Positions 5,951 through 55,705 of a stretch of DNA of 62,251 nt are shown here, one piece after another (within the stretch, counting starts at the first letter, position 1; each line of letters starts with the position of its first letter). The notes under the pieces are model-generated. The model was not told the origin of the DNA, did no database searches, and worked only from the letters and a program-made list of their open reading frames with translations. The position numbers were made by a program, and so were the translations under genes. This DNA is from Octopus bimaculoides (lineage: Eukaryota), in assembly GCF_001194135.2 (NCBI RefSeq), contig NC_069001.1, positions 6,893,821-6,956,071 of the forward strand, written 5' to 3'.

Positions 5951-6410
5951 GGCAGCTAGCTGGCAGAAACGTTAGCACACTGTTAGAAAGCGGTAAGTTG
6001 GCAGAAACGTTAACACGCCGGGCGAAATGCTTAACGGTACTTCGTTCTAAGTTCAAATTCTGACGAGGTCGACTTTGCCTTTCATCCTCTCGGAGTCGAT
6101 AAATTAAGTTCCAGTTACGCACTGGAGTCGATGTAATCGACTTAATCCCGTTGTCTGTCCTTGTTTGTCCCCTCTATGTTTAGCCCCTTGTGGGCAATAA
6201 AGAAATAAGAAACGTAAGCACACCGGGCGAAATGCTTAGCGGTATTTCGTCTGCCTTTACGTTCTGAGTTCAGATTCCACCGAGGTCGAATTTATCTTTC
6301 ATCCCTTCGGTGCCAATAGATAAAGTACCAGTTGCGTACGGGATTCGATCTAATCGAATGGCCGCCTCCCCCCAAAATTTCGGGCCTTGTGCCTATAGTA
6401 GAAAAGTATA
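5951..6410 (+). mobile_element. Nested or tandem cluster of SINE type A (head fragment, full copy, second copy with alternative tail)
   Basis: GCTGGCAGAAACGTTA occurs twice, followed by CCGGGCGAAATGCTTA, GTTCTGAGTTCAAATTC and AAGTACCAGTT. Tails are TTGTCTGTCCTTGTTTGTCCCC...AATAAAGAAATAAG and CCCCCAAAATTTCGGGCCTTGTGCCTATAGTAGAAA. Confidence 0.9.
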
Positions 6411-6454
6411 TTTCATATACACGCCACGGATCACTTATTTTTCTTAGCTTATAC

Positions 6455-8033: not shown

Positions 8034-8634
8034 ATCTGGACATTGCACGAGTGCGTGCAGAACGGTTTCGTCGCTCTGACCGCATCTCGGGCAGGTCGGT
8101 CCGGTGGTTTTCGAACCGTGCCTGTAGATCTTCTCTCGAACTGGTAGTGCGTCCCGATAGCATTGCCAAGCCAGAGATCTCTGGCAGTTATCCATAGGCC
8201 TCAGCACGAACGTCGTCCTGAAAAGGCGGGTTAGGAATTTCTCGTCGACACCCAGGTTTGCCCAGAGTGTGTCGTCGGACCTCCCCTCCAGTAGTCCACT
8301 ATAGAACGCATTGGTCGTTTGGAAGTTGCACAAGTTTGATCCCGGACAGCAGAGCTGCTGTAGAGCTTGGCGACACTCGCAGTGCCAATCGCCCAGTTTC
8401 AGTCTCTTTTTGATCCATGTTTGCAGTTCGTTAAGTGAGACGAGCTGCGGGAAGGCGCGCCTCACGAACGGCGTCCACACCTGTTCACCGTCGTCAATGA
8501 AGTTCGAGAGATTCCGCAGTCTCAGCGTTTGTCTGCGCATCATTAACCACAGCACCCCCAGTCCTCCATCTAACGGACGTTGACAGCAAATGGATCGCCT
8601 CACCATCGGAACGCCACCCTTCCGCAGAAAGCGG
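8034..8634 (-). mobile_element. Tx1/L1-clade LINE ORF2 C-terminal fragment (post-RT region and zf-RVT)
   Basis: Open frame FLRKGGVPMVRRSICCQRPLDGGLGV...LAWQCYRDALPVREKIYRHG...CPRCGQSDETVLHALVQC carries the GGLG motif and the CxxC...ETxxH...C knuckle typical of L1/Tx1. It runs into a gap. Confidence 0.9.
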
Positions 8635-29297: not shown

Positions 29298-29610
29298 CTA
29301 AGCAAGAAAAAAAAAGTGGGAGGAGAATGTAAAAATATTAACCAATGAGACAGCAAGAAATCTGTGACGACATTAAACTTTCCCCCATCTCTTTTAAAAT
29401 TTTTGTAGTGTTTTAATGGTGACGGAGCAACGAAGGGAATAGCTTGCAGTGTTATGTTTCATCGGGACCTATAACATTCTGTGTTCAAATCCTATCTGAA
29501 CACACTTTCTACTTCATCCTGTAACTATGACATATAAAATCAGTACCAGTTATATACTGGTACTTATATCAGTTAAATCTACACCGCTCAAATAAATCTG
29601 TTATTTTATA

Positions 29611-29830
29611 ATAATCCTTTCTACAAAAGGCACGAGGCCTGAAATTTTGTGAGAGGGGACCGGTCGATTACATCGTCCCCAGTGTCTCACTAGAACTTGA
29701 CTTATCGACCCCGAAAGGATGAAAGGCAAAGTCGACCTCGGCGGAATTTGAACTCAGAACGTAAAGACGGGAGAAATGCTGCAAAACATTTTCACCCGGC
29801 GTGCTAACGATTCTGCCAGCTGGTCGCTTT
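29611..29830 (-). mobile_element. SINE type A
   Basis: GAAAGGATGAAAGGCAAAGTCGACCTCGGCGGAATTTGAACTCAGAACG...GCTAACGATTCTGCCAGC. Confidence 0.9.
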
Positions 29831-29835
29831 TATAA

Positions 29836-29933
29836 CACTGGTTCCCAACCTGTGGTCCGCGGACCCCTGGCGGTCCGCACAGGCAGTACTGGGGATCCGT
29901 GAACTAAATTCAAAAATTGATACACACACACAC

Positions 29934-30784: not shown

Positions 30785-31042
30785 GCTACCTTCTCGTGTC
30801 ATGCCGACTTACAAAGGCCAATATCTCGGTTTCCATGGCGTATACATTTCCCACCTGGACGGGACATCGGTCCACCGCGGAGTTACTCATTTTTGCCAGT
30901 TGAGTGAACTGCAGCAACGTGAAATGAAGTGTTTCTGATCAAGAAAAGAAAAAAAAAAAACATGTCGCCTGGTTCCGGAATCGAAACCAAAATCTTACTA
31001 TCATGAGTCCAACAGTCTAACCACTAAACCACATGCCTTCAC
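30785..31042 (-). mobile_element. SINE type B
   Basis: TTACTCATTTTTGCCAG..GAGTGAACTGCAGCAACGTGAAATGAAGTG; GGAATCGAAACC; CTAACCACTAAACCACATGCCTTCAC. Confidence 0.85.
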
Positions 31043-31054
31043 AAAATGAAGTTC

Positions 31055-31280
31055 TTTCCCAAGTAACATAGATGCATAGGGCTATATAAATTCCCCACCT
31101 GGACAGGACGTCGGTCAGTCGCAGGATTACTCATTTTTGCCAGCCGAGTAGACTGCAGCAACGAGAAATGAAGTGTTTTGCTCGGGAACACAACGCGTTG
31201 CCCGCCCGGTCCAGGAATCGAAACCACAATCTTTCGATCATGAGTCCAATACCTCTAGCCACTAAGCAACGCGCCTACAC
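31055..31280 (-). mobile_element. SINE type B (tandem with 30785-31042)
   Basis: CTGGACAGGACGTCGGTCAGTCGCAGG...CCAGGAATCGAAACCACAATC...CCACTAAGCAACGCGCCTACAC. Confidence 0.9.
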
Positions 31281-31359
31281 CGATAGCAATGCGATACATA
31301 TTAACGATATGGTCCCTTAGAGCAGCGTCCTGTGTGGGTTATGTTATACTCTTTTCTAT

Positions 31360-31556
31360 ATTTTCTACTAATAAGCACAAGGCCTAAAACTTTTGAGGAA
31401 GGTATGGTTGTTTACATTGACCCCGATGTTCAACTGGTACTTATCTCATCGACCGCAAAAAGATAAAAGGTAATGCTGACTTCAGCGGGATTTGAACTTA
31501 GAACTAAAAAAATGAAGACGAGCGAAATGCCGCCAAGCGGTTTGTCCGGTGTGCTT
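31360..31556 (-). mobile_element. Degraded SINE type A
   Basis: AACTGGTACTTATCTCATCGACC; GGATTTGAACTTAGAAC; CGAAATGCCGCCAAGC. Confidence 0.75.
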
Positions 31557-31558
31557 TG

Positions 31559-31596
31559 TGTCCTAAGGTGAGGATCGAACTCACGACCTTCAGATT
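31559..31596 (-). pseudogene. tRNA(Met)-like 3' half (or SINE head fragment)
   Basis: Reverse complement AATCTGAAGGTCGTGAGTTCGATCCTCACCTTAGGACA has an intact T arm (GTGAG-TTCGATC-CTCAC) and matches the 3' half of metazoan elongator tRNA-Met from memory. The 5' half is absent. Confidence 0.6.
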
Positions 31597-31612
31597 CTAC
31601 AACATATTTTGT

Positions 31613-31803
31613 TTTGTAGTAAAGATTGTTTGCCAACATATCATGGCAGTCCTGATTTAGGACTAATGTTGTTGTAATTTAGCCCCAGGAGACATCGTCT
31701 CCAGCTGGCTATACGACACAATGTCTCCTGGGGTTAAATTACAGCAGCATTAGTCCTAAACCAGGACTGCCATGTTATGTTGGCAAACAATCTTTACTAC
31801 AAA
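31613..31803. repeat. Long inverted repeat (83-bp arms, 25-nt loop)
   Basis: Arms 31613-31695 and 31721-31803 differ at 5 positions. Confidence 0.95.
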
Positions 31804-31931
31804 GTACTGTTGCTGAATATCTCACGTTGTGAGATTTTAAAAATAGTAATATTCTAATACTTCGTTTTGTTTATGAGAGTAACGTACTGCCAACTGCGCC
31901 ATAGAGGAACTCCGTAGGCTATGTTGTTATA

Positions 31932-52057: not shown

Positions 52058-52416
52058 TGATTTGCGAATAGTCGACAAGGAAGGCGGAAAGATAGATAAA
52101 TACAACCCTCTTAAGTACGAAAATAAAGAAGGTGAAGACAGTGCCAATTATTGTTGGGTCCTTGAGAACAGTATCAGAAGGCATCAAGAGGATTATAAAG
52201 GAAATCAGAATAGAATGCCCTGTAGAACTGTTACAAAAGGTTTGCCTCCTTGGCACGGCCAGAATGATTACGAAAGTAATAGACAGCTGAAAAGAACGGA
52301 TAGCATGGAACCGTAGGCTGCAGGTAGCAAGCCCGCTACTTCTGTAAGACTCCATGAGCTCCAACAAAACTTTGATGGCACGCGCAGCTCTCTCACTCAA
52401 TAATAATAATAATAAT
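52058..52416 (+). mobile_element. R4/Dong-like LINE 3' end (RLE C-terminus, 3' UTR, TAA tail)
   Basis: DLRIVDKEGGKIDKYNPLKYE/IKKVKTVPIIVGSLRTVSEG...LLQKVCLLGTARMITKVIDS* (stop ends 52290), UTR, then (TAA)n at 52401-52416. Confidence 0.9.
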
Positions 52417-52417
52417 C

Positions 52418-52630
52418 TTTTGTACTGTAGGCACATGGTCTGAAATTTGGTGGGAAGGAACTAGTCGATTACATCGACTCCAGTGTTTCACTCGTACTTG
52501 ATTTATCGACCCCAAAAAGATGAAAGGCAAAGTTGACCTCGGTGGAATTTGAACTCAGAACGTGAAGACGGACGCAATACCGCTAAGCGTTTTGCCCGGT
52601 GTACTAACGATTCTGCCAGATCGCCACCTT
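52418..52630 (-). mobile_element. SINE type A flanked by TAA
   Basis: GAAAGGCAAAGTTGACCTCGGTGGAATTTGAACTCAGAACG...CTAACGATTCTGCCAGATCGCCACCTT. Confidence 0.9.
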
Positions 52631-52942
52631 AATAATATTAATATCGATAATAAAAGTAATAATAATCCTAACAATTATTTTATCTTTTACTTGTTTCAGT
52701 CATTAGACTGCGGCCATGCAAAATAAATAAATAAATAAACCATAGTAATTCTCGATCCCATTGTGACTGGGTGTTGATGGTGAGATCGGCTGAGTATAGC
52801 TTTGTTAACGGGAAACGAAAGAACAAGAGGCGAGTAAAAATGGCGTGTTATAGCTGCTGCAGATTGGTTAAATATGGCTGGCGAATCAGCACAGTCTAAC
52901 AAACGCCGTTAATGCAACTCTTTCACCTTTTCTTTCTTTCTC

Positions 52943-55383: not shown

Positions 55384-55705
55384 GTGAAGACGCATGGCTC
55401 AGTGGTCAGAGCGTGGGACTCACAATCACGAGGTAGTTGATTCGATTCGACGCGTTGTGTCCTTGAGCAAGACACTTTATTTCACGTTGCTCCAGGCCAC
55501 TCGGCTGGAAAAGATGTGTAGTGCCTGTATTTCAAAAGGGCCAGCTTTGTCACACTCTGTGTCACGCTGAATCTCCCGGAGAACTACGTTAAGGGTTACA
55601 CGTGTCTGTGGAGTGCTCAGCCACTTGCACGTTAATTTCACGAGCAAGCTGTTCCGTTGATCGTATCAGCTGGGACCCTCGTCGTCGTAACCGACGGAGT
55701 GCCAC
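55384..55705 (+). mobile_element. Chimeric SINE: type B head and core with type D tail
   Basis: GTGAAGACGCATGGCTCAGTGG; GTGTCCTTGAGCAAGACACTTTATTTCACG; CCTGTATTTCAAAAGGGCCAG...GTCACGCTGAATCTCCCGGAGAACTACGTTAAG...CGACGGAGTGCCAC. Confidence 0.9.

What the first reader, a model, noticed from the sequence alone, without database searches (positions are those of the whole stretch)
31559..31803. 191-nt foldback sitting 16 bp from an isolated tRNA-Met-like 3' half
Seen: two 83-bp inverted arms (31613-31695 and 31721-31803) with only 5 mismatches enclose a 25-nt loop that contains the palindrome CCAGCTGG. On the + strand 3 of the 5 mismatches become G-U pairs. Just upstream lies the anticodon-loop-to-3'-end half of a tRNA-Met-like sequence on the minus strand. 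Known: long hairpin RNAs are Dicer/endo-siRNA and ADAR substrates, and coleoid cephalopods edit RNA heavily. Inference: this is either a rearranged tRNA-headed SINE whose tail was folded back by template switching, or an hpRNA-type locus that could make siRNAs against that repeat family.
Basis: partly seen in the sequence, partly recalled or inferred. Interest (0 to 1): 0.7.

Follow-up and report, generated by a model that had tools for sequence, protein, structure and literature searches.

The report
Palindromic insertion splitting an old SINE
The hairpin and the tRNA-like piece are real and belong to one 325-bp block of DNA that landed inside an old SINE copy, but it looks like an ordinary, decaying structural relic and not a SINE or a small-RNA gene.

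Summary
Arms 31613-31701 and 31715-31803 match at 82 of 89 positions across a 13-nt spacer (fold z about -22). A tRNA-like piece lies 16 nt away on the minus strand.

The interpretation mostly fails. The tRNA piece is a sharp-edged block, 29/29 identical to elongator tRNA-Met positions 37-65. Its last 8 nt are not the tRNA-Met acceptor, and there is no 5' half, A box or cloverleaf.

The neighbouring SINE is not the body of a tRNA-Met-headed element. It is an older copy (24% from its consensus) of a different, abundant family, and it is split. Its missing head lies at 31880-31900. Joining the flanks restores an unbroken SINE.

So 31555-31879 is one 325-bp insertion: tRNA patch, foldback and 76 unique nt. 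It has no terminal inverted repeats, at most 2 bp of target duplication, T-runs on both strands, and no other copy in the window.

The arm mismatches (5 transitions, 2 transversions) show no strand bias, which fits neutral decay. A mollusc survey found no endo-siRNA pathway.

Best reading: captured or patchwork DNA whose core was inverted-duplicated by template switching. A low-copy mobile element is the main rival. No collection held host DNA, so copy number and orthologues are untested. Interest is low.

The parts
31350..31554 (-). 3' part (consensus about 27-224) of an old copy of SINE family 1, the target of the insertion
   Evidence: nhmmer hit 31556->31361. 23.9% divergence from the 224-nt consensus built from 12 window copies. 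Aligns continuously with the head piece once the flanks are joined.
31555..31879 (.). 325-bp inserted segment that splits the SINE between consensus positions 26 and 27
   Evidence: Joined flanks (31915->31880 plus 31554->31350, minus strand) align to the SINE consensus without a break. At most 1-2 bp, (T)A, are duplicated. No terminal inverted repeat. No 12-mer is shared with the rest of the window. GC 38%, like the window at 37%.
31560..31597 (-). tRNA-like piece (Rfam tRNA model positions 35-71, 5'-truncated)
   Evidence: 18.5 bits against a gathering score of 29, E 0.03 in a 42-nt search.
31568..31596 (-). Sharp-edged block 29/29 identical to elongator tRNA-Met positions 37-65 (3' anticodon stem, variable loop, T arm with B box)
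   Evidence: In the same register the 36 nt 5' of the block match at 6/36 and the 8 nt 3' of it at 2/8.
31597..31612 (.). 16-nt spacer between the tRNA block and the left arm, holding two T4 runs on the + strand
31613..31701 (+). Left arm of the foldback, with inner small hairpins at 31648-31664 and 31688-31702
31702..31714 (.). 13-nt spacer or loop CAGCTGGCTATAC. The palindrome CCAGCTGG (31701-31708) is off the symmetry axis at 31708.
31715..31803 (-). Right arm, the reverse complement of the left arm with 7 substitutions (5 transitions, 2 transversions, one at a CpG)
31804..31879 (.). 76 nt of unique sequence at the other end of the insertion, with a small hairpin ATCTCAC-GTT-GTGAGAT at 31819-31835 and T4/A5 runs
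   Evidence: No tRNA 5' half is present here.
31880..31902 (-). Head (consensus about 3-26) of the same split SINE copy
   Evidence: GGCGCAGTTGGCAGTACGTTA lies on the minus strand at 31880-31900. A match this good in the right orientation within 400 nt occurred in 0.85% of 2000 shuffles. It ends at the consensus position where the 3' part resumes.

Best explanation
The foldback and the tRNA-Met-like piece are two parts of one 325-bp block of DNA (31555-31879). The block was inserted cleanly into the head of an older SINE copy, with no loss of target bases and at most a 2-bp duplication.

The block is a one-off mosaic and not a SINE. It consists of a 29-nt patch copied from an elongator tRNA-Met, a core in which about 89 nt were copied in reverse complement next to themselves across a 13-nt spacer, and 76 nt of unique DNA.

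The most likely origin is DNA captured or synthesised during repair of a break, with a polymerase switching strand (snap-back or template switch) to make the inverted duplication.

Since then the arms have drifted apart neutrally. There are 7 substitutions, mostly transitions, with no preference for keeping either RNA strand paired. Today it is a passive structural relic that can extrude a cruciform or, if transcribed through, form a double-stranded RNA stem of about 90 bp.

Shown: the repeat, the split SINE and the insertion borders, the extent of the tRNA block, the absence of TSD and TIR, and the absence of local templates. Inferred: the repair or template-switch mechanism, the order of events, and the lack of function.
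For: - Inverted repeat of 89 nt at 92% with sharp outer ends.
- The SINE is split. The head at 31880-31900 and the body from 31554 give an unbroken alignment to the consensus when joined.
- The host SINE is 23.9% diverged while the tRNA block is 0/29. P is about 4e-4 if they were equally old, so the insertion came later.
- The composition is mosaic, with a sharp-edged tRNA-Met block.
- There is no TSD above 2 bp and no TIR between the ends of the insertion. That excludes most TE superfamilies by their defining marks.
- There is no second copy of any part in 52 kb that holds 17 hits (nhmmer, E below 1e-3) to the neighbouring SINE family.
- The arm differences are 5 transitions and 2 transversions, one at a CpG. 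G-U pairs number 3 on + and 2 on -. MFE is nearly equal on both strands.
- Template switching is a documented source of new hairpins (PMC10710096, PMC8794818).
Against: - No ancestral or orthologous sequence was available, so neither the inverted duplication event nor the capture is observed directly.
- Arms of 83-89 nt are longer than the 15-55-nt inverted fragments typical of described template-switch mutations.
- No part of the insertion is templated from the sequenced neighbourhood, so the DNA came from elsewhere. That would also fit a mobile element.
- A clean insertion with no target loss is more typical of an enzyme-made insertion than of untidy end joining.
- A window of 52 kb cannot exclude a family with fewer than about 50,000 copies per genome.
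Confidence: 0.45

Rival explanations
1. The 325-bp unit, or the 191-nt palindrome nested in it, is a copy of a low-copy, non-autonomous mobile element. Candidates are a MITE-like or foldback element, or a TSD-less rolling-circle or tyrosine-recombinase type that happened to land in a SINE.
For: - The insertion is discrete and clean, with no target loss.
- The size and near-whole-length palindrome are typical of MITE or foldback elements.
- The inserted DNA is foreign to the neighbourhood.
- A possible TA/AA 2-bp duplication lies at the junctions.
- Small hairpins with the same stem letters (CTCAC/GTGAG) sit near both ends, one about 13 nt from an end as in Helitron 3' ends.
- TIR elements, Helitrons and 65 MITE families are reported in Octopus vulgaris (PMC13282606).
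Against: - No other copy of any part occurs in the window.
- The ends of the 325-bp unit are not inverted repeats.
- The 191-nt palindrome has no flanking target duplication beyond chance.
- The termini match none of Tc1/mariner, hAT, piggyBac or canonical Helitron (TC...CTRR inserted at A|T), judged by eye against motifs recalled from memory.
Confidence: 0.3
2. The hairpin is a functional RNA locus. Possibilities are a source of Dicer products (hpRNA or a young miRNA) or a dedicated ADAR substrate.
For: - The stem is very stable and nearly perfect, at about 90 bp on either strand.
- It gives sub-threshold structural matches to long plant miRNA hairpin models.
- Template-switch hairpins can become miRNA genes (PMC10710096).
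Against: - All Rfam matches are far below the gathering scores, for example 77.5 against 117 bits.
- The stem is much longer than the roughly 35-bp pri-miRNA design.
- There is no strand bias in the wobble pairs and both strands fold equally well.
- There is no homologous target or repeat family in the window.
- The mollusc survey found no endo-siRNA pathway.
- No expression data were available.
Confidence: 0.07
3. The locus is a rearranged tRNA-Met-headed SINE whose tail folded back.
For: A tRNA-related piece with a B box lies 16 nt from the foldback. On the minus strand it is followed at once by SINE sequence.
Against: - The SINE sequence belongs to another family with its own head. It is older, and it is the split target.
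- The foldback lies 5' of the tRNA piece, where a tRNA 5' half should be.
- There is no A box and no cloverleaf.
- T4/T5 runs on both strands would stop pol III.
- The arm is unrelated to either SINE family in the window.
Confidence: 0.04
4. The second arm is an assembly artefact in a gap-rich draft assembly.
For: The window has 28 N gaps covering 16% of its length. Palindromic misjoins do occur in draft assemblies.
Against: - The arms differ at 7 positions, mostly transitions, which is not what a fold-back of one read gives.
- The palindrome lies inside an 8-kb gap-free contig, with unique sequence on both sides.
- The flanks restore one continuous SINE, which a chimeric join would not do.
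Confidence: 0.05

Closest known systems
Hairpins created by template-switch mutations during DNA replication (Monttinen and Loytynoja; PMC8794818, PMC10710096)
   Same: A stretch is copied in reverse complement next to its source across a short loop. This creates an almost perfect stem in one event, which then decays by point mutation.
   Different: Described events are mostly 15-55 nt, while these arms are 83-89 nt. The palindrome here lies inside a larger foreign insertion. No ancestral sequence is at hand to show the event.
MITEs and foldback-type non-autonomous DNA transposons
   Same: It is about 200 bp, nearly the whole length is a palindrome, it is non-coding, and it is embedded in repeat-rich DNA.
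   Different: There is no target-site duplication beyond chance, no recognisable terminal motif and no second copy in the window.
Filler or captured DNA at repaired double-strand breaks (snap-back synthesis in end joining; endonuclease-independent retro-insertions). Named from general knowledge, not tested.
   Same: The insert is a mosaic with sharp internal borders and an inverted self-copy. It has no TSD, no TIR, and a small-RNA-derived patch.
   Different: The insert is long, at 325 bp, and the target lost no bases. Apart from the self-copy, no template lies nearby.
tRNA-derived SINEs, such as SINE families 1 and 2 of this window
   Same: It contains a tRNA-related stretch with a B-box-like GAGTTCGATCC.
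   Different: Only tRNA positions 37-65 are present. There is no A box and no 5' half. The tRNA part is at the 3' end of the unit in its sense orientation. There are pol III terminators inside and no TSD.
Drosophila hpRNA or endo-siRNA loci
   Same: It is a long inverted repeat able to form a long dsRNA hairpin.
   Different: No target homology was found and expression is unknown. Molluscs appear to lack the dedicated siRNA Dicer/Ago pathway.
Helitrons
   Same: It is a TSD-less insertion with a small GC-containing hairpin about 13 nt from one end.
   Different: The termini are not TC...CTRR and the target is not A|T. Judged by eye on the sequence.

Membership tests
tRNA gene or tRNA 3' half | Complete cloverleaf, or a 3' half running to the cognate acceptor end | tested here: not met
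   ARAGORN finds none at normal settings, with or without introns. The Rfam tRNA model gives only a 5'-truncated match at 18.5 bits against a gathering score of 29. Identity to tRNA-Met stops at position 65.
tRNA-derived SINE | tRNA-related head at the 5' end with A and B boxes | tested here: not met
   A B-box-like motif is present, but there is no A box and no 5' half. The tRNA block is at the 3' end of the unit in its sense orientation.
tRNA-derived SINE | Transcribable by pol III, with no internal T4+ terminator | tested here: not met
   T4 runs at 31607, 31612, 31835 and 31865 on the + strand, and a T5 at 31843->31839 on the - strand.
tRNA-derived SINE | Target-site duplication of several bp and many dispersed copies | tested here: not met
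   The split SINE shows at most 2 bp duplicated. There are no other copies in the window. Genome-wide copy number is not testable here.
MITE or foldback transposon | Terminal inverted repeats | tested here: met
   For the 191-nt core, the arms are 89 nt at 92%. For the whole 325-bp insertion the ends are not inverted repeats.
MITE or foldback transposon | Target-site duplication flanking the element | tested here: not met
   The best flanking direct repeat is 4 bp at asymmetric borders, which is the chance level for the offsets scanned.
MITE or foldback transposon | Multiple copies at unrelated sites | tested here: inconclusive
   There are no copies in 52 kb of window. No collection holds the host genome: the control scans for the abundant SINE also found nothing.
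Helitron | 5'-TC and 3'-CTRR ends, insertion between A and T, 3' subterminal hairpin, no TSD | tested here: not met
   The absence of a TSD and the subterminal hairpin fit. The termini and the target dinucleotide do not (sequence at the junctions).
miRNA families in Rfam | Score at or above the family gathering threshold | tested here: not met
   The best match is MIR2670 at 77.5 against 117 bits, and the others are lower. The matches reflect the generic hairpin shape.
hpRNA or endo-siRNA locus | Long inverted-repeat hairpin | tested here: met
hpRNA or endo-siRNA locus | Transcription and phased 21-23-nt Dicer products | not testable with these tools
   No read data were available. The literature reports no endo-siRNA pathway in molluscs.
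hpRNA or endo-siRNA locus | Sequence homology to a target gene or repeat | tested here: inconclusive
   None was found in the window. The rest of the genome could not be searched.
Template-switch inverted duplication | Inverted copy directly next to its source, separated by a short loop | tested here: met
Template-switch inverted duplication | An ancestral or orthologous sequence that has one arm only | not testable with these tools
   No related genomes are present in any collection.

The most novel reading that the evidence does not exclude
The 325-bp unit belongs to an undescribed family of non-autonomous elements with no TSD and no TIR. Its two ends carry small hairpins, one of them borrowed from the T arm of tRNA-Met, and its core is a long palindrome. 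It would be moved by a rolling-circle (HUH) or tyrosine-recombinase enzyme. Its transcripts would give the host ready-made 90-bp dsRNA stems.
Probability: 0.07. Interest if true: 0.5.

Novelty: new member of a known kind. Interest (0 to 1): 0.2.

Why it matters
It matters little. It is a clean, datable example of a foreign DNA block with an internal inverted duplication landing in a SINE, and the split SINE gives exact insertion borders.

If the source genome shows it to be single-copy and lineage-specific, it would be a neat case of de novo creation of a 90-bp hairpin in an animal that edits RNA heavily. If it turns out to be multi-copy, it would define an unclassified element family.

Neither outcome bears on a long-standing open question. 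There is no evidence that it does anything.

Tried and rejected
**Searches for other copies or orthologues**
- The ORFs overlapping the locus (31430-31639 minus strand, 31556-31660 plus strand) are not on record. A control ORF from a Tc1-like remnant elsewhere in the window (49962-50369) is not on record either.
- A six-frame concatenated protein query of the foldback plus tRNA piece, against 5.8 billion proteins, gave no hit at E of 10 or below.
- A control with a LINE ORF found only 4 short contigs, so that collection holds almost no DNA of this host.
- Exact-pattern scans for the arm in metagenome, viral and prokaryote genome contigs found nothing.
- Control scans with the core of the abundant SINE also found nothing. 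The negatives therefore say nothing about copy number.
- The T arm plus CTTAGGA was not found in viral contigs.

**Structural ideas tested and dropped**
- A full tRNA with an intron, or a cloverleaf closed by GTCCTAA in the left arm. RNAfold draws one (z -2.8), but ARAGORN finds nothing unless thresholds are lowered until it returns junk. Rejected.
- A MITE inserted into a tRNA-like gene. There is no tRNA 5' half to the right of the foldback. Rejected.
- A tRNA-SINE chimaera made by reverse-transcriptase template jump. The SINE is 24% diverged against 0/29 for the tRNA block, and the SINE head was then found on the far side. Rejected.
- Extension of the inverted repeat into the flanks. Not significant.
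- Local templates for the inserted DNA. No shared 12-mer.
- An endogenous parvovirus-like terminal hairpin. Considered only, with no protein search of the flanks. ORFs of 90 aa or more are absent between 30939 and 33394, and the right flank is unique within the window.

**Literature string searches**
- Searches for the two SINE motifs returned nothing, so the taxon stays unverified.

Full report
**1. The observation**

The sequence at 31559-31803 is as described.
- The repeat finder reports arms 31613-31701 and 31715-31803, 89 nt, 92% complementary, 13 nt apart.
- CCAGCTGG is at 31701-31708. That is 3.5 nt off the symmetry axis at 31708, so it is not the centre of the palindrome.
- The structure is far beyond chance. 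RNA MFE is -141.5 kcal/mol on the + strand and -139.5 on the - strand, against about -46 for shuffles, z about -22. As DNA it is -85.7, z -20.7.
- The repeat stops sharply at 31613 and 31803. A gapped alignment of the outward flanks scores 19, against 20.7 +/- 3.8 for shuffles.
- A self-comparison with low-complexity masking finds only loose inverted SINE pairs elsewhere (73-81% identity, at least 324 nt apart). This is the only tight palindrome in the window.

**2. The tRNA piece**

- No tRNA gene is called anywhere in the window by ARAGORN. None is called locally even with introns allowed, and only junk appears when thresholds are cut to 70-80%.
- When the stretch is cut so that a truncated match is allowed, the Rfam tRNA model matches 31597->31560 on the minus strand. 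The match covers model positions 35-71 at 18.5 bits, E 0.03.
- The 29 nt at 31568-31596 are identical to positions 37-65 of human elongator tRNA-Met as printed in PMC8216282.
- In the same register, the 36 nt on the 5' side match at 6/36 and the 8 nt on the 3' side (CTTAGGAC against ACGGGGCA) at 2/8.
- So it is a sharp-edged internal block: the 3' strand of the anticodon stem, the variable loop and the T arm. It is not a half that reaches the tRNA-Met 3' end.
- Its T-arm motif occurs once in the window.

**3. The surroundings**

Directly after the tRNA piece on the minus strand comes a copy of a 224-nt SINE.
- That SINE family has 17 nhmmer hits (E below 1e-3) in the window.
- The SINE has its own, different tRNA-like head.
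- The local copy is the most diverged of the 12 aligned: 23.9% from the consensus, against 9-20% for the others.
- It seemed to start at consensus position 25. A search for the missing head found GGCGCAGTTGGCAGTACGTTA on the minus strand at 31880-31900, which is 77 nt beyond the right arm.
- Joining minus-strand 31915->31880 to 31554->31350 gives one uninterrupted alignment to the consensus. The junction falls between positions 26 and 27.
- A head match this good, in the right orientation and within 400 nt, arose in 0.85% of 2000 shuffles. In addition, it ends exactly where the body resumes.

The SINE is therefore split by a 325-bp insertion at 31555-31879. No target bases were lost and at most (T)A was duplicated.

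**4. Anatomy of the insertion**

On the + strand it consists of:
- 58 nt that hold the complement of the tRNA block and a 16-nt spacer;
- the 191-nt foldback;
- 76 nt of unique sequence.

Its other properties are these.
- Its two ends are not inverted repeats.
- No direct repeat longer than chance flanks either the foldback or the whole unit.
- No tRNA 5' half lies to the right of the foldback.
- It has T4 runs on the + strand and a T5 on the - strand, so pol III would not read through it.
- Its GC content (38%) is that of the window (37%).
- No 12-mer of it occurs anywhere else in the window, while shuffled versions share about 3.
- A profile of the two arms finds only the arms themselves.

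**5. Ages**

- The arms differ at 7/89 positions: 5 transitions, one of them at a CpG, and 2 transversions. The JC distance is 0.083, about 0.04 per arm.
- The repeat clock used for Octopus vulgaris puts JC 0.09 at about 25 My (PMC13282606). On that clock the arms are about 11-12 My old. This holds only if the window is from an octopus and the arms have not been homogenised.
- The host SINE is at JC 0.29.
- Zero changes in the 29-nt tRNA block would have probability about 4e-4 at the SINE's divergence, but 0.31 at the arms' divergence.
- The tRNA block and the foldback are thus of similar, younger age than the SINE. That agrees with their being inside the insertion.

**6. Function**

- Transition mismatches give G-U on one strand and A-C on the other. 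Here 3 fall on + and 2 on -, or 3 against 1 within the 83-nt arms. This is no different from a coin toss, and both strands fold equally well.
- Rfam matches are generic long-hairpin matches, far below threshold: MIR2670 at 77.5 against 117 bits, and others lower.
- The stem is far longer than the roughly 35-bp pri-miRNA design.
- A survey of 32 molluscs, including O. bimaculoides, found miRNAs and piRNAs but no evidence of a dedicated endo-siRNA pathway (PMC12479628).
- Nothing in the window is homologous to the arms, so no 'repeat family' target exists within reach.
- If the region is transcribed, a 90-bp near-perfect stem would be a good ADAR substrate. That is a general expectation and not a finding.

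**7. Explanation**

The data show a later, clean insertion of foreign, mosaic DNA with an internal inverted self-copy. By their defining marks it does not fit any of the following:
- a SINE (no head, internal terminators, no TSD);
- a TIR transposon (no TIR at the ends of the unit, no TSD around the palindrome);
- a canonical Helitron (wrong termini and target).

By elimination I favour DNA captured or synthesised at a repaired break, with a strand or template switch producing the inverted duplication, followed by neutral decay (confidence 0.45). Template switching is a documented way of making hairpins in one step (PMC8794818, PMC10710096). The arms here are longer than usual for that process.

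The main rival (0.30) is a low-copy, unclassified mobile element. The cleanness of the insertion and the foreign origin of the DNA speak for it. The lack of any second copy, TIR or TSD speaks against it. Only a search of the source genome can decide.

The remaining readings are a functional hairpin RNA (0.07), a folded-back tRNA-headed SINE (0.04) and an assembly artefact (0.05). They are weak for the reasons given above.

**8. Limits**

- None of the collections holds this host's DNA. Scans for the arm in metagenome, viral and prokaryote contigs were empty, and so were the control scans for the abundant SINE.
- The six-frame protein search of the locus was empty.
- A LINE control found four short contigs only.
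- ORFs at the locus, and one control ORF elsewhere in the window, are not on record.
- Copy number, orthologues, transcription, small RNAs, editing and read support are therefore untested.

**9. Verdict**

The new fact is the split SINE, which defines a 325-bp insertion uniting the tRNA patch and the foldback. It is an ordinary kind of structural relic: low interest, a new instance of a known kind.

Noticed in passing
window 52402-52637(-), 29605-29839(-), 6192-6420(+), 49220-49408(+), 14323-14476(-) and others: An abundant SINE of about 224 nt has 17 nhmmer hits in 52 kb of non-gap sequence. Copies are 9-24% from the consensus built here. It has its own tRNA-like head (GGCGAGCTGGCAGAATCGTTAGC...) and an (ATT)n-like tail.
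   Followed up: partly
window 36141-36470 (-): Two partial copies of the same SINE lie head to tail (36309-36470 and 36141-36313).
   Followed up: no
window 49257-49319 / 49657-49719: An inverted pair of SINE copies, 81% identical and 338 nt apart. This is the ordinary kind of dsRNA-forming repeat pair, and more typical of ADAR substrates than the foldback under study.
   Followed up: no
window 55389-55457 (+), with related copies at 30841-31042, 31085-31280, 1656-1840, 17314-17451: A second SINE family. Its head is the only Rfam tRNA match above threshold in the window (29.4 bits). Its body contains GTGTCCTTGAGCAAGACAC. Two copies lie just left of the studied locus.
   Followed up: partly
window 49962-50369 (+): An ORF with a sub-threshold match to the Sleeping-Beauty-type HTH domain (25.6 bits against a cutoff of 43). 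It is probably a Tc1/mariner transposase remnant.
   Followed up: partly
window 8037-8606 (-) and 14868-15092 (+): LINE reverse-transcriptase C-terminal remnants (zf-RVT matches just below the Pfam cutoff). Both are cut by assembly gaps.
   Followed up: partly
whole window: There are 28 runs of N totalling 10,153 of 62,251 bases, and very dense TG/CA/TA-type microsatellites. It is a gap-rich draft assembly. The taxon was not verified by any tool.
   Followed up: no
window 31559-31566, 31648-31664, 31752-31768: CTTAGGAC, next to the tRNA block, repeats the TTAGGAC of the small inner hairpin in each arm. With GTCCTAA in the left arm it could close a 7-bp stem. The chance of this is about 2%, and its meaning is unknown.
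   Followed up: partly
window 31572-31588 and 31819-31835: Both non-palindromic ends of the insertion carry a small hairpin with the same stem letters, CTCAC/GTGAG. One is the tRNA T arm and the other is ATCTCACGTTGTGAGAT.
   Followed up: no
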